Shown: one piece after another, positions 8,051 to 43,434 of the stretch
Layout: each line of letters starts with the position of its first letter
Position numbering within the stretch: position 1 is the first letter of the stretch
From: Schmidtea polychroa
Lineage: Eukaryota
Length of the DNA: 64,000 nt
Direction of reading: 5' to 3'
Assembly: GCA_044892525.1 (NCBI GenBank)
Contig: CM097888.1
Span: 53,878,001-53,942,000 of the forward strand
Position numbers and translations under genes: made by a program
Notes under the pieces: generated by a model
The model's database searches: none
The model's input: the letters and a program-made list of their open reading frames with translations, nothing else
Told to the model about the DNA's origin: nothing

Positions 8051-9279
8051 TAAATTTTCCCATGAAAACAATTTAAATTATTTTCTAATGTAAAAGAATA
8101 TTTATTTTTTATTAACATTGAAACGAAAAATTTACGACATCAAAAGCAAAATTTATAATCCCAAATTTTCACTAAATTGATAATTCTAGACTCAAACAAT
8201 TAAATCCTGTAAAGAAATTAATAAATATATTATTTAATTTTGATTATTTAAATTTTATTAACAATTAAAAGGTTTTTTTTTGGCATTGAGTCCTTATTTT
8301 CACGCAATAATTTCTTTCTTATTTTACACTAAATAATAAAATTCAATAATTATTAAACAAATAAATATGATCGAAGTGAAAATGTATGAAATGGAGGATA
8401 GGTTATTCGAGAATTCTGAGAAAAAAAATCCACACATTTCATTGATATATGGACAAAGATTGAGGGGACTTACATGGTGATTTATTATAGAAAGGCAGAA
8501 AAATAATTTTGCTGAGAAAAATAAAATACAAACACCCTACACACAAAACACTATAATTACACACAGAAAGACAAATATTATTCAAATATCACTCATTTAT
8601 TACGGTATTTTTTAATTAAAAATATGCAATTTCAGGGTATTTCTAGCGTTTTATCCCATTCCAACTTTCTATGAGCTGTAAAGAAACAAATTGAAGCAAT
8701 GTAAATTATACTTTATTTAAAAGAATTCCAATGTAAATTCTTTTTAGAAATTTGGAAAATGAAGATAGATTACTGAAGATTATGGAAAATATAAGAGAAA
8801 AGCATAGAAAACCAATTTATAATTGAAATATTAAATTTCAATTTAAACATTATTAAATACTTCGAAGTTGATAAAAAGACTTGTATCAATTACGAAATAT
8901 AGAAATATTTACAGCAAATATTACCTTTTCTCAACATTTTCGGTTATAAATTATTTATAATTAATTTTAACCGGATTTTTACGTATTTATTAATAAAAAT
9001 TTGAATTTATTTCGATACAACGTGAGTTCTATTATTTTTAAATTAATTAATTAGTAAATATAATTTATTCATTTCCAAAGAAATATATTTTTTTACAACA
9101 TTTAGGGAAAAAACGGTGAAGTGTTCAAAATAGTTTTCCAAAATTTTATAATCATCTTTTTTTTCAGCTCACCTTCCAGAGCCTCATTGACTAAATCGGT
9201 CATTTTTTTCTAAATATTTCTGTAAATGATTTATTATATTGCGTTTATTCATTACAAGGATTTTACATATCGAAGTTTT

Positions 9280-9465
9280 TACTATGTGTTGTGCTTGTGT
9301 GTGTCAGTTTATTTTTTCTACCACTTCCTTACTTTCTATATTAAATGCGTTTATTCATTACAGCGATAAAATCAACACACAGATAAGTTTGTGTGTTTAT
9401 ATAATATAAACTTATTGACTTTTTGTAACATTATAGATTCGTTTATTCATTTTCAAACGGGTGTA
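9280..9465. repeat. Subterminal fragment related to the Tc1-like element at 30398-32389
   Basis: Shares tgtgttgtgcttgt...ttttctaccactt...acacacagataagtttgtgtgtt with 32205-32390, 36000-36100 and 43270-43434; ends in GGTG|TA. Confidence 0.55.
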
Positions 9466-16257: not shown

Positions 16258-16622
16258 AAAAAAGGCCGATTGATTAAAGCACCAGCACTCAAGGCTTCCA
16301 TGAAAGCTTTGATAACTAATCTGGCGATTGTACCGAGATTGTTGATGAGTTCAGCTTTAGTCATACCGACTCCATTATCGTACAATGTCAAATTATTGGA
16401 ATCTTTATCTGGAATAACTTTAATCATTGACTCCTTTTGGCTATCCAAGACTGATTTACCCGTTAAGGTCTTATAACGAACTTTATCAAGAGCATCGCTA
16501 TCATTGAAAATCAATCCTTTAAGGAAGATTTCTTTGATTGAAAAGGTGTTGATGATTAAGCTCATCAACTGAGAGATCTCAGCTTGGAAATCAAAGGTTT
16601 CAGCTTCTCAAATTTTTGACAT
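16258..16622 (-). pseudogene. HSP90: Hsp90 N-terminal fragment, intronless, with in-frame stop
   Basis: ATG at 16622: [49 protein letters not shown]...[34 protein letters not shown] at codon 5; the FYSN motif is shortened; similarity ends around the DISMIGQFG region. Confidence 0.9.
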
Positions 16623-19069: not shown

Positions 19070-19745
19070 TACTGACTATGAATCAGCAAAGATATCGATG
19101 GTTTTTTGATATTCAGTAATTTTCGGCAAAGCCTTTTTTGAATGATTTTAATCATTATCTATTAAATTTTGAAAATATGGGGAAAAATGAATTTATTTTG
19201 TATTATATATTAATATTATTTGTCAATTTTAATTTTAATTTTTAATTTAAAATTTTAAATAATATTAAGTTTTAAGATAATTTTGATTTAAATTTTACAA
19301 GTTTTTTTAAATAAAAGTTTTTTGATAAGAATTTCTGTGCTTAATCTTTGTAATGTATTTTTGAAGGCATCTTGTATCATTAGGCATTTTGTTTCGTGTA
19401 ACAGTGGTGCTGATTTCTGTAGTATTTTCCGGTGTTCGAGATAATTACTGGTTTTGTTTTTGATGTGTTCGCTGAGTCCTGTTCGAAATGTTCTATGTGT
19501 TTCCCCTATGTACGATGCGTCGCATCTTGTGCAAATGATTTTATATATAATATTTTTTGAAAAGTAAAAACATTGTGTAGAAGAGTGGCATAGACAATCT
19601 CCACGAAACAGGTCTGATGCTGGTCTGATATATGAATCAGTAAATATATCGATGTTTTTGATATTCACTAATTCGTATTCTTTAAGCTTTTTAATAAATA
19701 TAATGGAAAAGATCAGTGGTGAAATTGGTAAAAAAGTTCTTATAA
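19070..19745 (-). mobile_element. Truncated Penelope-like element: GIY-YIG endonuclease fragment between family-A direct repeats
   Basis: ORF 19668-19288 contains IIYKIICTRCDASYIGETHRTFRTGLSEH. Repeats tatgaatcag(c/t)aaa(g/t)atatcgatg...ttttgatattca occur at ~19078 and ~19631. Confidence 0.8.
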
Positions 19746-30397: not shown

Positions 30398-32389
30398 CAC
30401 CTAACCGCGAAAGTTAACATTGTCTATAATATACGTTGGTGTGCACACCACCTGAGGTGAGTCACCAATTATATGACAATGTTAACTTAATTTCATTTAT
30501 TCTATTTTTCAAAAATCATTTTAAGGTAAGTTTTTGAATTGAAGTAATTTTTAGGACTTGAATTTTGATTTTATATAATTATGAGATCATTATTCAAGTT
30601 CTTAAATATTACTTTTAGTCATCATTTATAATTTATCATTTATAAATATATTAATAATTAAATTTCAGTTGTTTTTTTAGGAAATCTATGATATTTTATG
30701 CATTAATATGGAATTATTTCGCTAAAATGTAAGTTAAATATTTTTATATTTATAAATAAATAAAGTAATCACCATACACATTTATTTTTTTAATACATTT
30801 AGGGAAAAATCGGCGTACATGAACGAAATAGTTTTTTAAATTTTTATAATCTTCTTTCTGTAGCTCATTTTCGATGGCTTCTTTGACGATGTCAAATCTG
30901 CTTGGGAAGGACATTGAACTGAATCCATTTGTCCTTGATATTACTTTTCTGATGCTGCCTTTGATTTTACTAAACACGCTTTCTATTGGATTGAGGAATG
31001 GGCTATATGGTGGTAGGTGTTCTATATAATTATTCGGAGAAATTGCTCCACTATGAATTGAAGCATTGTCATGAATGAGACGGTATCCTGTCCCATTCAA
31101 TTTTATACTTAATTCATTAATAAAATTTTGGTAGGTATCCTTTTTGTAGGATCCTACAATTAATCGGTGATGAATTGCACCTTTCACACCTATTGCTAAC
31201 AGAAATGACATGTTTTTTCCTCGATTATTTGAAACTATGGAGTATATTCCTTCTCCTTTTTTCTTCCTTCCATAGGTTTGTGTAGTCCACGTATTGAAGC
31301 TGCATTCATCAATAAAAACGAGATTTTTATCTCGCCAGACTTCTTCGAGAAAGCGTGTGACATACTCCATTCGGATTTGAAGTACGCGATCTGAATTTCT
31401 TGCTTCCACACATGGTCTTACCTTTTTAACCGTTATTAAGTGATTTTTTAGAAATCTTGAAATAGCAGTTGTGGATGCCGAGCAATTTTGTTGTAACAGG
31501 AAAATTCGCATTTCTTCTAACGTTGCATAAAAATTGGCTTCGACAAAATCCAACAAATTATTTCCCTGTTCTTCTGAAATAATTTGTTTTCTGCCACTTC
31601 TTTTTCCTTTTGTAATTTCGGCATATTTCTTATATTTGTAAATTATTGAAATAATTGAATTTTTGGGGATTCCGAGCAATCTTCCAAATTCTTTATAATT
31701 GTCCCCATTTTCAAATGCATTAATAAGCCGAATTTTATCTATTTCTGTAATTCTTTGAAAATATTAATTTGTTAAAATAATTTATTAAAATTTACGATTT
31801 GCGATTATTTTTCTGCAAATTCGAAGTTGTTGAAGGACCTTCTTCAATATTTGAAATGGTACCTTCACGCAAAGAAATATCTGTTATACTGTAAAATATT
31901 TTAATATTTTATATTTTAATGAATAAATCTTACATTGTCAGATCTTCAACTTCGCAAAAAGCCACTGTGTCCTGTGAAATATCTGTAAATCTAAAGAAAT
32001 TTTATATTCCAAATTATTTTATAATTAAATCTTACGATATATCTTCTTTTTTTTCCCTAAAGCTCAACGTAGAGCAGTCGGAATCTGATTCAAAAGTTTT
32101 TTTGTACATAATTTTTTAAATAATTTAAAAATATTGATATGTTAATTATATGTTAATCAATCTGAATTTCGCATGAAAAACACTTTACTTAATTTTGTAT
32201 GTATTTTTCATTATGTGTGCTGTGCTTGTATGTTTAATTATTTTCTCTCACTTTTTAGATTCCTATAATAAATATGTTAAATTTCGCGGCATTAAATTTC
32301 TACACACAGGTAAGTTTGTGTGTTCCTATAATATATATTTATTGATTTTTTTTTAGATTACAGATAATGTTATATTTCGCGGTTAGGTG
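30398..32389 (-). mobile_element. Apparently full-length IS630/Tc1/mariner-superfamily DNA transposon, 1992 bp
   Basis: TA|CACCTAACCGCGAAA at both ends (15 bp perfect, ~28 bp imperfect TIR), TA TSD, encloses a transposase ORF. Confidence 0.85.
30750..32109 (-). CDS. Tc1/IS630-like DDE transposase; predicted 4 exons (32109-32036, 31990-31934, 31888-31796, 31752-30750), 408 aa
   Basis: HTH-like N-terminal region plus LVFIDECSF, LIHDNASIH and LPPYSPFLNPIE motifs. The unspliced frame has no ATG; three GT-AG introns (45, 45, 43 nt) join it in frame to an ATG at 32109 (1227 nt total). Core ORF confidence is high; splicing is predicted. Confidence 0.85.
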
Positions 32390-33049
32390 TAGAAATTGCA
32401 CACACGATTTTTGTATTTTACTCATTAAAATTTTCTACCCTTTTCTGAATTCTATAATCAATGAAAATAATATTTAAATAATGTCTTATGTTATATATTT
32501 GTTTTAAAACAATAATTGACAGAGTTTTCTCGAAGACATAAAACATTTTTCTTTTTTAATTTAAACATAATTTTTAGAAATAAAAACGATTCACATATTT
32601 ACAGAATATAAATGTGAGAGCCATTAAAATTATTCATCACTTTCCTGTTGTTAGATTATTTCAAAAAATTAAGAAACCATTTTGTTAATTAGTTTTTTTC
32701 AAAATTGAAAATATTTTACTTAAATTAACTTATTAATTATAGTTAATTTGTCAAATAACTACAGAAAAAACAACATATATACAATGCAACGTTTATGAAA
32801 TAAGGTTGCTTATACAAATTTTCTTGATTTTTAGTTTTAAAATAAACTNNNNNNNNNNNNNNNNNNNNNNNNNNNNNNNNNNNNNNNNNNNNNNNNNNNN
32901 NNNNNNNNNNNNNNNNNNNNNNNNNNNNNNNNNNNNNNNNNNNNNNNNNNNNNNNNNNNNNNNNNNNNNNNNNNNNNNNNNNNNNNNNNNNNNNNNNNNN
33001 NNNNNNNNNNNNNNNNNNNNNNNNNNNNNNATACCCAGTGGAAATCCCA

Positions 33050-33659: not shown

Positions 33660-35144
33660 GTAACAATAATAAAGTGAAATAAGAATAGATTATGCTAAAT
33701 ATATATTTAAGCAGTACACAAGTAAAATGATTAGGAATTAAATTAATGTCTAGATCCTTAATTAAATATTTCAATTACGAAAAGAAATTCTTGTATAATT
33801 ATATATTTCATAAATCATTTTTCTTTTATTGCATTTGTTTTAACTTGTTACAATAAGACATTTGTGAAATAATTTTAACAAAGTAGTTTAGTAAATGAAA
33901 GGAAAGTTGACATAGACTCGTGAAGTAAATGTAAAATAAAAAGTAACTAAATAATCAAGAATGGGGATGGAAATTATAAATTTACAAACAAATGTTAAAT
34001 AAAATAATAGCGATAATTATAACCATGATGAAAGCCAAATTGAATTTATATTATAAAAATTTATTTCTACTAAAACTTAAATTATTTTAATTTATTCTAT
34101 TATTCCTCCATTTATCTCTGATTAAACAAATCATGTTCTTAGATTTTGTCATACAATATTTATATTAATATCCGATATTTTTAATAAATTTTTCCATTCA
34201 GCGTCAAAAATAAATACTGCATATATACATTATAACATTTTAGTCTTTTAAAACGCAGTGTATGAGTTTTCCGGTGGCAGGCAACAAGATTTTACATTGA
34301 GATAAATTTTGTATAATACATTTGTATATAAAGTAGTCAATAATACAGATTGGTATGCAAACCAATAGATGACTCATAATTTGTCAGTTATTATATTTTT
34401 ATCAAAAATTAAAAAAATTGTTTTTTTGGGATTTTTTTACAATTTTTAGGCAATGATTTCCAAACTTAATGATACTAAGCCCCCTTTTAATATTGTATAT
34501 TTAATTTCTAAGGTATGTTTTGATAATCTTTAATTAAATTTACTTTCTTTATATTTTCATTTTATTTATGCATTTTGAGAAAAATGGCGAATATTGATAA
34601 AATAATGTTTATATATTAATGTATTTCCTTTGTTAAGTCTAGTTTTTCAGATTTCTAAATTATAAAAGCTAAATTAATTTTTATTTATAAATGAAATTAG
34701 TTCTCATCGTTTACTTTGTTCTCTTTATTTTCACGATAACTCATTTTTGTAATAAATTAATTTTATTAGTGTTTTCGGCATTACATTCTAAATTTATATG
34801 TTATTTTTTTCTAAAAAATTAATTTTTAAAATGTTTTTATTTCATTCAACAATTACACATATTGAACGTTGTACATGCATTTTATACACCTATTTTCAAT
34901 GAATAAAAACTTCTATAATCTAAAAAAAATCAATAATTTTATAGTATCGAAACACAAACTNNNNNNNNNNNNNNNNNNNNNNNNNNNNNNNNNNNNNNNN
35001 NNNNNNNNNNNNNNNNNNNNNNNNNNNNNNNNNNNNNNNNNNNNNNNNNNNNNNNNNNNNNNNNNNNNNNNNNNNNNNNNNNNNNNNNNNNNNNNNNNNN
35101 NNNNNNNNNNNNNNNNNNNATGAATAAAAACTGTTAACATATAA

Positions 35145-35315
35145 TTTATTAAAAAGAGAGTTAAATGACTATAAATCAGTAATATATCTATGTTTATTGA
35201 TACTCACGAATTTTCGGCACTGCCTTTTTGATTTATAGTCTTCAAGCTCTCTATTTAATAAATTCAATGGGAAAAATAATCAGTGGTGAAATTGGAAAAA
35301 AATGTTCTTATAATG
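35145..35315 (-). repeat. Penelope-associated family A repeat, hammerhead core truncated
   Basis: Near-copy of 26940-27135; retains aaaaaGGCAGTGCCGAAAATTCGTGAG but lacks the upstream cacttg. Confidence 0.7.
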
Positions 35316-36915
35316 TTAACATATTATTATTATTATTAACATGACGAAAAATCTTCGTAAGATTTTTTTATAAAGTTATTATAAATTAAATATTTCTATA
35401 GCATTTCAGATATTTCTGTGAAAACGATGCCTTTTTCCGAACGTGAAAAAATGACAACCATTTCAAATATTCAACCATGACAAAATTCGAATAATTACAG
35501 TGAAACATATATCTGACTTACACTAAATCTAAATAATTCTAAAATTCATTATATTCATTCTTAAAATTAAATATAAATTATAATATAAATGTTGAATAAA
35601 GTAATATTTAATTCTTGCCAGCCAAGTGATTCCAAATGGAATCATTAATTCAAAATTCAATTTTTATCTTTTGAAGATTAAAAAAGTTGGCTGCAACTAA
35701 TGTGAATGCATTTTTAACATTTTGCAATACTGAATACACATAAAAATTGTATTAGATAACAAAAATAATTGCATTTACCAGCGTCCTGTCGCATAACCTA
35801 TACTGTGCATATATGAAATCAAAATGCAAGCCTTACAATTTAATTAAAATTAAAAATCATACTTGAAAGATATTTCTAAAATGGCTAAAATAAATGAATT
35901 TGTAAATGAATTTAATTTTCTCACAAATGGTGAGTCACCTATAATTAATGTACACACCTACCTGCATTATAACAATTTTTATTTATTGAGAATATGTGTA
36001 CTATGAGTTGTGTTTGTGTGTTCAATTTAATTTTTCTACCACTTTATCAATTTCTATATTAAATGATGTTATTCTATACAACATTAAAAATCAACATACT
36101 TATAAGCTTTAAAATCTTTTAAATTTCTTGCTTTATTTTTCTTCAGTTATTTAGTTTGATTATGGATACAATAATTACTCGAAGTACGGAAAAATCAACA
36201 ACATTAAAATATACCAACATTCTGAATCCAATCACATTTACAATTTCAAGTAATATGATGTGATTTTTAAGGTTTTAAATAAGAGAAATTGAAAAAAAGA
36301 TTCTTTAAAGAAATGTTTCCTGAAAATCAAATATTCCAATTATCTTATCCTCTTGTAATCATCTCATCAAATTTTTGATATTTTTAAATAAATAATGGAT
36401 TTGATTTTTAAGTGCCATAAAGGAAATAAATATGTGAAATTCCCATTGAACAAACTTTTCAATCCATTTAAATAAAGAAAAATTAATTTATATCCAATAA
36501 ATTTCTTTTATTTATTTCGAATGAACATTTCTTTTTCTGAAATGCTTTAAATTGTTTTAATGGAGTTTATAAGGAGTTTTCAATGAATTGTGAATAACAT
36601 TTTACTTGATAAAGGCGAAAGGTTTTCATTAATTGAATGAGTTAAAAATGTTCATGCAGGTTTCATGTAGGTTTCATGTAAGCATCTTTTCCGAAAGTCT
36701 GACATATGGAATATGAAGCATTTTACTAGCAACAAAGATATGAAATAAAATGACATCTGCAATAAGCATGTGATATTTTTCAAAGTTTGTATACCACCAT
36801 TATCATACGATGAGTTTTCATATATTATTAAAGAAAATTGCAATTTTATAAAATTATTTATTAAGCAATAACCAAAAGAAAATTTGTAATTTTGATGTCA
36901 TCTTATTGTCTAAAT

Positions 36916-38696: not shown

Positions 38697-39763
38697 TGGC
38701 GACCCTGGCAATGATCAATAAAATGATCCCAGATATTTACGATGTCAGCGTCGATGTAGAAGTTTTTATTGGAGGTATTTCCAATTATGTGGACTAGAAC
38801 AATCCAGTCAAAGGATGATAATCAAATGTTTGATCGCAAGAGAGTTGTTGCAAATTTATGAAGCAATAGAAGAAAATGAAACTTGTTTTGAAGACAGATT
38901 GAAAAAAACTTTCAAGAAGCCAACGACGTTGATAGGGGATTTTCTAACCCTCTGCAATTATGAAAAGAACAAAAATACTGCCCCAGTATATTTCGAAAAA
39001 ATAGAAAAGATGGTTGACCAAGTTCTGAAGCATAAATGTGACAAGAAAGAATTAATGTCATATCATTTGGTCCATTGAAAGAAATAAAGATGAAAATGTG
39101 ATGAGCATTGACGAAATAAAAGGAGTGATAAGGTCGATGATATAGACATTGAAGTATCCGGAATTTCAGTTCTAAATAGAAGGAAGGAAACGTTTGCAAG
39201 TATTGTCAAAACAAGACAAGAATTTGCCGATAGACAGAACCAAAACAGAAATTTTACAAATTCACAACGGAGTGAACAAAGATATGATTCAACACCGAGG
39301 ATGAAAGCCGATAATTTCCAGAACAAATTCCAACAAAGAGAAATGCTGGTTAGAAACAGACCAGTTATTACATGTTGGAATTGTCAGGAGATGGGTCATA
39401 TGAGTCGAGAATGTCGGAAACCAAGGATTCAGAAATGCTTCCAATGTTGAAAAGAAGGGCACCAATCCAGAGAGTGCAATCAGAGAGCACATAATGCAGA
39501 GATGAGATGTTTTGCGTATTGGACACAACAGAAGAGAATGCCCATCAATATTGTGCTCAGGATGCGGTAGAAGAGGCCACTTACGATTTCAATGCTGGAA
39601 TCAGACAAACCGAAAAAGATACGCAGACGAGCGTGGACCAACGAGACGGACACAAGTAGCCGCGTTTCAGACTGAAGCCGAGAACGACGAAAAGATCTCA
39701 TGTCAAGACGAAGACTACCCAAACCAAGAATCTTTAGACGAGATGATTGGGGCAATAAATTAA
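38696..39763 (+). pseudogene. Frameshifted gag with four tandem CCHC zinc knuckles; pol absent
   Basis: CWNCQEMGHMSREC, CFQC*KEGHQSREC, a frameshifted CFA..GHNRREC, and CSGCGRRGHLRFQC; stops and frameshifts upstream. Confidence 0.85.
38697..38709 (+). promoter_or_regulatory. Putative primer-binding site TGGCGACCCTGGC
   Basis: TGG complementary to tRNA CCA directly after the LTR-terminal CA; TGGCGACC would fit a tRNA-Arg-type 3' end (inference). Confidence 0.65.
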
Positions 39764-42230: not shown

Positions 42231-42789
42231 GTTTCATAATTTCAAGATTAGGATAACCTACCATTAGAATATTATTTTAAAATTATTTTAAGGTTTAGAG
42301 CCTACAAAAAAAATCTACAAATTTATAAAAGGGAAAAAAATCAAATTGAGACAATCGAAGTTTAAACTCAGTCTAAGAATTCAAAATTAAAAAAAAGGAT
42401 TTTCATTACAAAAATTTGATGTTATTCCAGCCTAATTCTAAGAGAATCAAAGACATATAATATATTGTTTTCATTTGTTAATCCTTTACGGCTGTTGAAC
42501 TATTAATAACTATTTCATTAGTTACTTGTGATTAAATTTAGAATTATTTATGTATATAAAATATGTACAATCGCTGAGAGAATATTTATTCTTCACTTGT
42601 TAAATAAAATTCCTTACTATTGTTTCATTATTTTTTGTACTTTTCGACTACTTCATTCCTAAATATAATTCCGTTCTACATTGCCTTATTGACAAATTAT
42701 AATAATGAGCCATAATTACGTATCAAATATTACCGAAGTCCGAAGTTTGTCCTTAAACCAAAAAAAACCTATTTTCTAAAGTGGTGGTT

Positions 42790-43434
42790 AGTTTTCACCA
42801 ATTTAATGAATTAATTCTAGAAATTTATTTTAGCCATTTTTGAAATATATTTCAGGTAAGACGTTAAATTTAAAATGTTAATTTAAGGTAAATTTTAAGG
42901 CTTAAATTTTGATCCATATAGATGTGAGATCATTATTCAAGTTCTTAAATATTACTTTAAGTCAACATTTGTATTATAAATATTTTATAATTATTTCGAT
43001 AAAATGTAAGTCAGATCAATTATTAATTATAATTAAATAATTAAATCAATCACCAAAAATGTATTTTTCTAATTCTAATGAATAACTTAATTTTAACTCA
43101 AAAATAATTCCTATGGTGATATTTCGTCATTTTCATGAGAATTTAAAGTAATTTCTTTAAAAATACAGTTAAAAACATTTTCAGCGATCTTTTTCTCAAA
43201 ATTGTCTAAAATGAAGTTATTATAGAAATGAATCTCAGCGGCGCGTTTCTATATATCGAAAGTTTGCATGTATATTTTAATATGTGTTGTGTTTGTGTGC
43301 AGTATTTAATTTTTCTACCACTTAGCGTATGAGAACATCAGCGTGAAATCAAAGTAAGTTTGTATGTTTCTAAAATGTAAGATTATTAATTTTTTTCTTA
43401 TATTACAGGAAACGTATCTCAGTGGTGTTTGGTG
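42790..43434. mobile_element. Non-autonomous deletion derivative related to the 30398-32389 element
   Basis: gagatcattattcaagttcttaaatattactt matches ~30583-30615; the right part matches 32205-32389 and ends GGTG|TA. Confidence 0.7.

What the first reader, a model, noticed from the sequence alone, without database searches (positions are those of the whole stretch)
30398..32389. Apparently intact Tc1/IS630-type transposon whose transposase needs three tiny introns, probably from tandem exon-intron duplication
Seen: the long ORF lacks a start codon, but three GT-AG introns (45, 45, 43 nt; all phase 2) link it to an ATG at 32109, giving an uninterrupted 408-aa protein. Introns 1 and 2 both start GTAAGATTTA, and exons 2, 3 and 4 begin xTDIS, xTDIS and ITEID, i.e. 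a repeated module of about 100-140 bp. TIRs and TA TSD are intact. Inference: the ~75-aa acidic Ser/Thr-rich N-terminal extension grew by duplication of an exon-intron unit. Splicing could regulate transposase expression, or the gene may be partly domesticated. It is the only undamaged TE ORF in the window.
Basis: partly seen in the sequence, partly recalled or inferred. Interest (0 to 1): 0.8.

Follow-up and report, generated by a model that had tools for sequence, protein, structure and literature searches.

The report
Intact transposon with three mini-introns
This is a complete cut-and-paste DNA transposon of the IS630/Tc1/mariner group whose transposase gene can only be read after three ~45-base introns near its start are removed, a layout its relatives share, so it is real and neat but a variation on a known theme.

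Summary
Window 30398-32389 (minus strand) is a 1992-bp element with matching terminal inverted repeats, TA on both flanks and an uninterrupted 333-codon ORF. The ORF passes NCBI's IS630 transposase model, matches Pfam DDE_3 and folds like Mos1 mariner transposase. It has no in-frame ATG.

Such a path alone is weak evidence: 24-33% of null sequences yield some path, and 0.2-1.8% yield one as long with equally good donors. Comparison is stronger. All 8 relatives of 40-49% identity with DNA available carry a 38-49 nt GT-AG interval at exactly the same codon position and phase as intron 3. Several have one more intron upstream.

The N-terminal exon plus last intron is therefore ancestral to this clade. 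Tandem duplication is well supported for units 1 and 2 and only suggestive for unit 3. The D-to-E spacing (28 residues; 27-30 in relatives) matches no named family that I found. No transcript data were available and the host was not identified. Overall: a new variant of a known kind, of moderate interest.

The parts
30398..32389 (-). Whole transposon (1992 bp), transposase sense on the minus strand
   Evidence: Inverted terminal repeats and TA on both flanks
32390..32391 (.). TA flanking the 5' end (putative target-site duplication)
   Evidence: weak evidence by itself in a ~24% GC genome
30396..30397 (.). TA flanking the 3' end (putative target-site duplication)
32354..32389 (-). 5' terminal inverted repeat
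   Evidence: (I1) and 7: 36 nt, 86% match to the other end, first 15 nt identical
30398..30433 (-). 3' terminal inverted repeat
32274..32289 (-). Sub-terminal second copy of the TIR core (candidate second transposase binding site)
   Evidence: D7 (15/16 with 32367-32382) and I23 (94% complementary to 30405-30420); function inferred
32110..32353 (-). 5' untranslated region / presumed internal promoter region
   Evidence: Lies between the TIR and ATG 32109; 23% GC over 32110-32389, TIR included; promoter not shown
32036..32109 (-). Exon 1 (74 nt, starts at ATG 32109)
   Evidence: 32% GC
31991..32035 (-). Intron 1 (45 nt, GTAAGA...TTTAG, phase 2)
   Evidence: 13% GC; a 45-nt homologue with both splice sites is kept in a related relic
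31934..31990 (-). Exon 2 (57 nt, symmetric phase 2-2)
   Evidence: open 57-nt homologue in the relic at 35402-35458
31889..31933 (-). Intron 2 (45 nt, GTAAGA...TTACAG, phase 2)
   Evidence: 75% identical to intron 1 with flanks
31796..31888 (-). Exon 3 (93 nt, symmetric phase 2-2, ends in a basic patch)
31753..31795 (-). Intron 3 (43 nt, GTAAAT...CAAAG, phase 2): the intron shared with relatives
   Evidence: Same codon position and phase in L001-L008
30750..31752 (-). Exon 4 (1003 nt including the stop at 30750-30752): DNA-binding and catalytic domains
31620..31730 (-). First helix-turn-helix of the DNA-binding region
   Evidence: Pfam HTH_SB E=1e-7, below its gathering score; weak match to the Sleeping Beauty PAI subdomain 6urs; helices in the model
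30945..31322 (-). DDE catalytic domain. D at 31308-31310, D at 31068-31070, E at 30981-30983; 79 and 28 residues between them
   Evidence: Pfam DDE_3 63.6 bits; NCBIfam IS630 116.7 bits; triad invariant in 18 sequences
30434..30749 (-). 3' untranslated region
   Evidence: Between the stop codon and the 3' TIR; 22% GC over 30398-30749, TIR included

Best explanation
Window 30398-32389 is an autonomous-looking cut-and-paste DNA transposon of the IS630/Tc1/mariner group, sitting in a very AT-rich eukaryotic genome.

Its single gene has four exons. The host spliceosome must remove three very short, AT-rich introns (45, 45 and 43 nt, all phase 2) to join ATG 32109 to the main ORF. The product is a 408-aa transposase. 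It has a 75-residue acidic, Ser/Thr-rich N-terminal extension that ends in a small basic patch. [quoted passage not shown]

By analogy with solved Tc1/mariner transposases, the protein would bind the terminal inverted repeats (and probably the sub-terminal copy of their core), cut the element out and insert it at TA.

Each donor is G|TAA in frame, so an unspliced message stops after 25 codons. Splicing is therefore obligatory. Exons 2 and 3 are symmetric, so skipping either one keeps the frame.

The last intron and an N-terminal exon are ancestral to this clade. The extra exon-intron units arose by tandem duplication of a roughly 100-140 bp segment running from the N-terminal exon, through the intron, into the first codons of the following exon.

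Shown: the anatomy, the family assignment, the conservation of intron position, and the similarity of units 1 and 2. Inferred: actual splicing, present activity, the role of the extension, and the duplication origin of unit 3.
For: Family and integrity:
- Pfam DDE_3 63.6 bits; NCBIfam IS630 equivalog 116.7 bits against a cut-off of 100.
- AlphaFold model with pLDDT 81; its best structural matches are full-length Mos1 mariner transposase (E=1e-10) and the Sleeping Beauty and SETMAR catalytic domains.
- The D/D/E triad is invariant across 18 aligned sequences.
- The window copy departs from only 4 of 55 highly conserved columns; relatives depart from 0-6.
- TIRs and TA flanks are present.

Introns:
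- GC is 32-37% in exons and 9-13% in introns. Codon usage favours the proposed frame.
- All 8 relatives with DNA (L001-L008, 40-49% protein identity) have a pyrimidine-rich ...AG acceptor 1 nt plus 4 codons before the conserved D-K (E-K in L007) of the first helix. That is the position and phase of intron 3.
- In the 7 relatives whose contig reaches far enough upstream (all but L001), a GT donor lies 38-49 nt before the acceptor.
- 5 of the 8 have no in-frame ATG between the nearest upstream stop and the helix-turn-helix.
- In L004-L008 the same search joins an ATG-initiated exon through that intron.
- Internal exons of relatives are also multiples of 3 nt: 54, 57 or 60, and 63.
- Two copies of one relative (L004, L005) lie in different flanks. 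They differ at 10 of 991 positions in the main exon yet encode the identical protein.

Duplication:
- Unit 1 against unit 2: z=4.2, p<0.002, and 75% identity against a maximum of 73% for 60 between-element pairs.
- Exons 2 and 3 share an identical 11-mer start.
- Coding introns number 1-2 in relatives and 3 here.
- A related relic in the window keeps a 45-nt homologue of intron 1 and an open 57-nt homologue of exon 2.
Against: - No transcript evidence of any kind was available, so splicing is inferred.
- Some ATG-linked path exists in 24-33% of null sequences, so the path alone proves little.
- The window's N-terminal peptide is not significantly similar to those of relatives once composition is preserved (best p=0.053). 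Only short motifs are shared.
- Introns 1-3 and 2-3 are no more alike than unrelated introns of the family.
- The acceptor of intron 3 (CAAAG) is the weakest of the three.
- More distant relatives (25-35% identity) mostly begin with an ATG 4-12 residues before the helix-turn-helix and have no intron. The extension is therefore not needed for the fold.
- The protein runs 5 residues beyond the point where nearly all relatives end.
- Only one full-length copy is in view, and the host and its usual intron size are unknown.
Confidence: 0.78

Rival explanations
1. A dead copy. The element lost its start codon by mutation, and the three upstream 'exons' are chance open stretches that happen to be linkable by GT-AG pairs in AT-rich DNA.
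For: Some ATG-linked path with up to 3 short introns exists in 24% of shuffles and 33% of genomic decoys. The window's N-terminal peptide is not significantly similar to those of relatives. More distant relatives have an ATG just upstream of the helix-turn-helix.
Against: The last intron lies at the same codon and phase in 8 of 8 close relatives, and 5 of them also lack any in-frame ATG. The exon/intron GC contrast is sharp. A path this long with all-GTAA donors occurs in only 0.2-1.8% of nulls. A diverged relic in the same window keeps intron 1 at exactly 45 nt with both splice sites. The main ORF shows no excess loss of conserved residues.
Confidence: 0.08
2. A host gene derived from a transposase (domesticated or on the way to it). 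The introns and the N-terminal extension would reflect recruitment into host gene regulation rather than a mobile life.
For: Intron-bearing ITm transposases in bivalves (TLEWI) were interpreted this way (bioRxiv 10.1101/656579). Only one intact copy is visible in 64 kb. The ORF is well preserved.
Against: Both TIRs and the TA flanks are present, together with a sub-terminal repeat of the TIR core, whereas TLEWI lack TIRs. Three deleted relatives ending in the same ...GGTG|TA lie in the window. The relative L004/L005 sits in two different flanks. The element lies in TE-rich, gene-poor DNA.
Confidence: 0.06
3. The introns are real, but the usual product is shorter. Exons 2 and/or 3 are skipped, or only part of the 5' structure is used, so the 408-aa form is one of several isoforms or a minor one.
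For: Exons 2 and 3 are 57 and 93 nt, both phase 2-2, so skipping keeps the frame. Relatives function with one N-terminal exon (L005, L007, L008). Alternative acceptors lie 8 and 19 nt inside exon 2.
Against: Those alternative acceptors need a poor GTTGAA donor to restore the frame. There are no expression data either way.
Confidence: 0.08

Closest known systems
Bacterial IS630 family transposases (NCBIfam NF033545)
   Same: The main exon scores above the curated cut-off of the IS630 equivalog model (116.7 against 100 bits, residues 7-270). It has a DDE triad, an N-terminal helix-turn-helix, a TA target and short TIRs.
   Different: It lies in a eukaryotic setting and carries spliceosomal-type introns and a 75-aa N-terminal extension. 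The D-to-E spacing is 28, against 35 for IS630 itself (table in PMC11544213).
Tc1 and Tc3 of Caenorhabditis elegans, and Minos of Drosophila hydei (Tc1 family, DD34E)
   Same: These are TA-inserting elements with TIRs whose transposase genes carry one short intron in the 5' part, so the full DNA-binding domain is made only after splicing. This rests on my own knowledge of the literature and was not checked with a tool here. The fold class is the same.
   Different: The spacing is 28 rather than 34. There are three introns instead of one. The extension is a repeated modular unit lying upstream of the helix-turn-helix rather than an intron within the DNA-binding domain.
TLEWI, Tc1-like elements with introns in pteriomorph bivalves (Puzakov et al., bioRxiv 10.1101/656579)
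   Same: An ITm transposase split by 2-5 GT-AG introns, with intron number varying among members. The authors call introns in class II elements rare.
   Different: TLEWI have a DD36E signature, lack TIRs, are low-copy and are proposed to be domesticated. Here the TIRs and TA flanks are intact, the spacing is 28, and all introns cluster in the first 360 nt of the gene.
Mos1 mariner transposase (PDB 3hot, 5hoo)
   Same: Best structural match of the predicted model over its full length: two helix-turn-helix motifs plus an RNase H-like catalytic domain.
   Different: Sequence identity is 16-19%. Mariner has D as its third catalytic residue with a spacing of 34, no introns and no acidic extension.
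Drosophila P element (splicing-controlled transposase)
   Same: Transposase production depends on intron removal by the host (cited as Laski et al. 1986 in 10.1101/656579).
   Different: It belongs to an unrelated superfamily. Retention of a P intron yields a repressor protein that keeps the DNA-binding domain. Here an unspliced message would give only a 25-aa peptide, so no such repressor is expected.

Membership tests
IS630/Tc1/mariner (ITm) group | DDE/D catalytic triad in an RNase H-like domain | tested here: met
   Pfam DDE_3 63.6 bits; triad D148/D228/E257 invariant in 18 sequences; the model matches the Mos1, Sleeping Beauty and SETMAR catalytic domains
IS630/Tc1/mariner (ITm) group | N-terminal bipartite (paired-like) helix-turn-helix DNA-binding domain | tested here: met
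   HTH_SB E=1e-7, though below its gathering score; six helices in residues 3-102 of the model; full-length structural match to Mos1
IS630/Tc1/mariner (ITm) group | Terminal inverted repeats and a TA target-site duplication | tested here: met
   36-nt TIRs, first 15 nt identical; TA on both sides. TA alone is weak evidence in AT-rich DNA
IS630 family (NCBIfam equivalog NF033545) | Score above the curated cut-off of the model | tested here: met
   116.7 bits against a cut-off of 100
IS630 family (NCBIfam equivalog NF033545) | Prokaryotic insertion sequence with one uninterrupted transposase gene | tested here: not met
   No in-frame start without removing GT-AG introns; eukaryote-like, TE-rich setting
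Tc1 family (DD34E) | [quoted passage not shown] | tested here: not met
   28 residues here, 27-30 in 17 relatives
mariner (DD34D) and pogo (DDxD) | D as the third catalytic residue | tested here: not met
   E257 is invariant; no Pfam match to mariner- or pogo-type transposase domains
TLEWI (intron-bearing Tc1-like elements, DD36E) | Spliceosomal introns in the transposase gene | tested here: met
   Three GT-AG introns, the last shared with 8 relatives. Splicing itself was not observed
TLEWI (intron-bearing Tc1-like elements, DD36E) | DD36E signature and absence of TIRs (10.1101/656579) | tested here: not met
   Spacing is 28; TIRs are present
Named ITm families in general | Placement inside a named clade in a phylogeny with reference transposases | not tested
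   Reference sequences cannot be fetched by name. The families listed in PMC8533490 have spacings of 34-41 or 82, and a search for DD27E-DD32E in the paper library found only a DD31E signature listed for one partial Wolbachia-phage transposase, no named family
Domesticated transposase gene | Loss of TIRs; single copy at the same site in related species | tested here: not met
   TIRs and TA flanks are present. Orthology across species cannot be tested with these tools

The most novel reading that the evidence does not exclude
This would be a previously unnamed clade of IS630-like eukaryotic transposons (D-to-E spacing 27-30). In it, the transposase's N-terminal regulatory tail is built from a cassette of symmetric phase-2 mini-exons and ~45-nt introns. 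The cassette multiplies by tandem duplication, so copy number varies between lineages (1 to 3 coding introns). In-frame exon skipping or intron retention would then let the host splicing machinery set how much transposase, and which isoform, is made. That would be a Tc1/mariner-group counterpart of P-element splicing control.
Probability: 0.15. Interest if true: 0.6.

Novelty: new variant of a known kind. Interest (0 to 1): 0.4.

Why it matters
Transposases of this group are normally annotated as single ORFs. Here the start of the gene is invisible unless ~45-nt introns are recognised.

Several database proteins of the family carry wrong N-termini for this reason. Either an intron has been translated through (P0001, P0003, P0005) or the protein has been cut short inside the first helix (P0002, P0004, P0009).

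The locus gives a clean small example of an exon-intron unit being duplicated in tandem inside a mobile element. It also points to a clade with an unusually short D-to-E spacing that I could not find named in the literature I could search.

If splicing is confirmed, the clade would be a useful case for asking how dependence on host splicing limits where and when a DNA transposon is expressed. Introns in Tc1-type genes are already known, however, so this refines the picture rather than changing it.

Tried and rejected
- **Host identification.** The HSP90-like ORF returned only unnamed fragments. The window holds just an N-terminal HSP90 fragment. The sample accessions of the relatives occur in no searchable paper. 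Rfam and tRNA scans found nothing.
- **More close relatives.** The metagenome scan returned 80 loci, all 24-36% identical. They were useful only as an outgroup that is mostly intronless. DNA was not retrievable for P0011 and P0016.
- **Homology of the N-terminal peptide.** The relatives are significantly alike among themselves, but the window against relatives is not. I therefore do not claim sequence homology of the whole extension, only shared short motifs, shared position and similar composition.
- **Duplication of unit 3.** Local alignment and intron-identity tests were not significant.
- **Tandem Repeats Finder.** It sees no 100-140 bp period; the units are too diverged.
- **Literature.** 'DD28E' and neighbouring signatures turned up no named transposon family. 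I found no citable open text for the introns of Tc1, Tc3 or Minos, so those statements rest on my own knowledge.
- **Spliced protein in remote tools.** The 408-aa protein has no reference id, so I did not send it to the remote search or structure tools. It was built only inside scripts, from exons as they stand, to test the splice model.
- **Short peptides in a script.** In one search I copied short peptides printed into a script for the shuffling test.
Full report
**1. What is there**

The window is very AT-rich (20-32% GC in 2-kb bins) and carries ten N runs. Read on the minus strand, 32389 to 30398 is a 1992-bp unit bounded by inverted repeats. The first 15 nt are identical at both ends and occur nowhere else in the window. 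Identity is 86% over 36 nt. TA lies immediately outside each end. A second copy of the repeat core sits about 90 nt inside the 5' end (D7 and I23).

The only long ORF in the whole window lies inside this unit. From 31751 to 30753 it gives 333 codons.
- Pfam finds DDE_3 (63.6 bits) and a sub-threshold Sleeping Beauty-type helix-turn-helix.
- NCBI's IS630 equivalog model is passed (116.7 bits against a cut-off of 100).
- An AlphaFold model built on 18 aligned sequences has mean pLDDT 81.
- The best PDB matches are full-length Mos1 mariner transposase (E=1e-10), then the catalytic domains of Sleeping Beauty and SETMAR.
- The catalytic residues are D148, D228 and E257 in exon-4 numbering, with 79 and 28 residues between them. 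In 17 relatives the second spacing is 27-30.
- The copy departs from the family at 4 of 55 highly conserved columns, inside the range of its relatives (0-6).

**2. The splice model, tested on the sequence alone**

The ORF is closed 5 codons upstream of its first residue. It has no ATG until about residue 82, which would remove the first helix-turn-helix.

I wrote a path search that knows only these rules: begin at any ATG, allow GT...AG introns of 35-75 nt, use at most three, permit no stop, and arrive in frame in exon 4. It finds only ATG 32109 and four paths.
- exons 32109-32036, 31990-31934, 31888-31796 and 31752-30750;
- introns of 45, 45 and 43 nt, all phase 2;
- 1227 nt in total, giving 408 aa.

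Null models show how little the mere existence of a path means. With the upstream 637 nt shuffled (dinucleotides preserved), 24% of sequences give some path. With random pieces of the window, 33% do. Requiring at least 60 added codons and all-GTAA donors brings this down to 0.2% and 1.8%.

Two independent features agree with the model. Exons 1-3 have 32-37% GC like exon 4 (33%), while the introns have 9-13% and the UTRs 22-23%. The proposed frame also fits exon-4 codon usage better than the other two frames.

**3. Relatives decide the matter**

The closest proteins in 5.8 billion sequences are only 40-49% identical. They are unnamed and lie on 1.2-2.5 kb contigs from environmental or run-level assemblies. 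The exhaustive search finds 35 clusters at E<=1e-30.

I fetched the DNA for eight close relatives (L001-L008) and read their upstream regions.

- In all eight, a pyrimidine-rich stretch ending in AG stops exactly 1 nt plus 4 codons before the conserved D-K (E-K in L007) that opens the first helix. This is the position and phase of window intron 3.
- Where the contig reaches far enough (all but L001), a GT donor lies 38-49 nt before the acceptor.
- In five of the eight there is no in-frame ATG between the nearest upstream stop and the helix-turn-helix, just as in the window.
- In the other three (P0001, P0003, P0005), the gene caller's 'N-terminus' is the intron translated through.
- For L004-L008 the same path search joins an ATG-initiated exon through this intron.
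- L004 and L006 have a second coding intron upstream, and L002 has at least two.
- Their internal exons are again multiples of three: 54, 57 or 60, and 63 nt.
- The exon before the last intron ends in a basic patch in each of them, as exon 3 does here.
- Near the start of their N-terminal exons, L002 and L006 read YSDISSAS, L007 reads YEDIS and L004 reads FSNISSAT. Window exons 2 and 3 read FTDIS and ITDIS.

L004 and L005 are two copies of one relative in different flanks. They differ at 10 of 991 positions in the main exon yet encode the same protein, the signature of purifying selection on a mobile gene.

More distant relatives (25-35% identity) mostly start with an ATG 4-12 residues before the helix-turn-helix and have no intron. 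L031 appears to have an 11-nt first exon and one intron.

The simplest history is an intronless ancestor, then gain of an intron just upstream of the DNA-binding domain in this clade, then changes in the number of upstream units.

**4. The duplication claim**

- Unit 1 (end of exon 1 plus intron 1) aligns to unit 2 (end of exon 2 plus intron 2) with z=4.2 and p<0.002.
- With 15-nt flanks they are 75% identical. That is above all 60 pairs of introns taken from different elements (mean 57%, maximum 73%).
- Introns 1-3 and 2-3 reach 65% and 64%, which is within that background.
- Exons 2 and 3 start with the same 11 nt at the same offset from the acceptor, and exon 4 starts similarly. My own binomial estimate is about 1e-3 for exons 2/3 and about 0.015 for either against exon 4.
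- Both internal exons are symmetric (57 and 93 nt).

A tandem duplication with one breakpoint in the N-terminal exon and the other a few codons into the next exon would give this pattern. The new internal exon would open like the helix-turn-helix exon and close like the N-terminal exon.

A related, heavily deleted element in the window (about 34.9-36.0 kb) adds to this. It keeps a 45-nt homologue of intron 1 with both splice sites (34/45 identical). It also keeps an open 57-nt homologue of exon 2 (39/57), whose translation begins ISDIS and ends EREKMT. That sequence bridges window exon 2 and the modules of the relatives.

I rate duplication of units 1/2 as well supported and that of unit 3 as plausible. 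The extension as such was not created by the duplication, because relatives with a single upstream exon already have it.

**5. How it most likely works**

- Shown: the parts list above.
- Inferred from the family: the transposase binds the terminal repeats through its two helix-turn-helix motifs, and the DDE domain cuts and rejoins at TA.
- Inferred from the anatomy: splicing is obligatory, because every donor forms an in-frame TAA with the last exon base, and an unspliced message would yield 25 residues. Skipping exon 2 or 3 would keep the frame.
- The extension has 15 acidic, 9 basic and 20 Ser/Thr residues among 75 (net charge -6), against +19 for the rest of the protein. It is probably disordered. 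The basic patch next to the DNA-binding domain is a candidate nuclear-import signal. None of this was tested.

**6. What is known**

Named ITm families have spacings of 34-41, or about 82 for Sailor (PMC8533490). I found no named family for 27-32.

Introns in this group are described as rare. The TLEWI elements of bivalves have 2-5 introns but lack TIRs and have a DD36E signature (10.1101/656579). From my own knowledge, Tc1, Tc3 and Minos each carry one short 5' intron.

This element is therefore a new variant of a known kind. Membership of the ITm group is met on every feature tested. It is not a Tc1 (DD34E), mariner, pogo or TLEWI member by their defining features.

**7. Limits**

There were no transcripts. 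The host is unidentified. Only one full-length copy is in view, and there are no close copies for a selection test on exons 1-3.

Noticed in passing
window ~8916-9453 (+), ~42750-43421 (+), ~34885-35979 (transposase sense on +): Three diverged (68-85% identical), internally deleted relatives of the element. They lack most or all of the transposase ORF but keep parts of the 5' and 3' untranslated regions. Each ends in ...GGTG followed by TA, like the intact copy, though their outer repeats differ from its 15-nt terminus. The third spans an N run, which was left as it is.
   Followed up: partly
window 32303-32322: A 20-nt palindrome-like motif in the 5' UTR (CACACA...TGTGTG arms) is conserved in the deleted relatives. 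On the plus strand, antisense to the transposase, it reads AGGTAAGT, a perfect 5' splice-site consensus. Its meaning is unknown.
   Followed up: no
proteins P0001, P0003, P0005 (loci L002, L007, L008); also P0002, P0004, P0009: Database proteins of this family have artefactual N-termini. In three, the gene caller translated straight through the last intron. In three others, it started at an internal ATG that removes part of the first helix.
   Followed up: yes
L004:329-1702 versus L005:250-1629: Two copies of one relative lie in different flanks. They are 95.5% identical overall, with 10 differences in the 991-nt main exon and an identical protein. A 6-nt length difference falls inside the upstream intron.
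   Followed up: partly
L005:1-200: About ten tandem copies of a 21-nt unit lie immediately upstream of the relative. The reverse complement of the unit begins like the CACCTA terminus of the window element.
   Followed up: no
L007:22-88: The contig begins with what looks, from my memory, like a sequencing-library adapter. The first ~90 nt of that locus should not be read as genome.
   Followed up: no
L031:200-300: A distant relative (31% identity, 30% GC) seems to have an 11-nt first exon (ATG plus 8 nt) and one intron of about 52-60 nt, close to but not clearly at the same codon as intron 3.
   Followed up: partly
window 16269-16607 (-): An isolated fragment equivalent to residues ~5-118 of cytosolic HSP90 (61-71% identical to database fragments). 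No further HSP90 exons are in the window, so it is likely a pseudogene or a captured fragment.
   Followed up: partly
window 19291-19668 (-) and 39512-39760 (+): Short ORFs with weak, sub-threshold Pfam matches to a GIY-YIG nuclease domain (E=0.006) and a CCHC zinc knuckle (E=0.0007). They are probably remnants of other mobile elements.
   Followed up: partly
window 30753-30767 (-): The transposase runs 5 residues past the G-D where nearly all relatives end.
   Followed up: no
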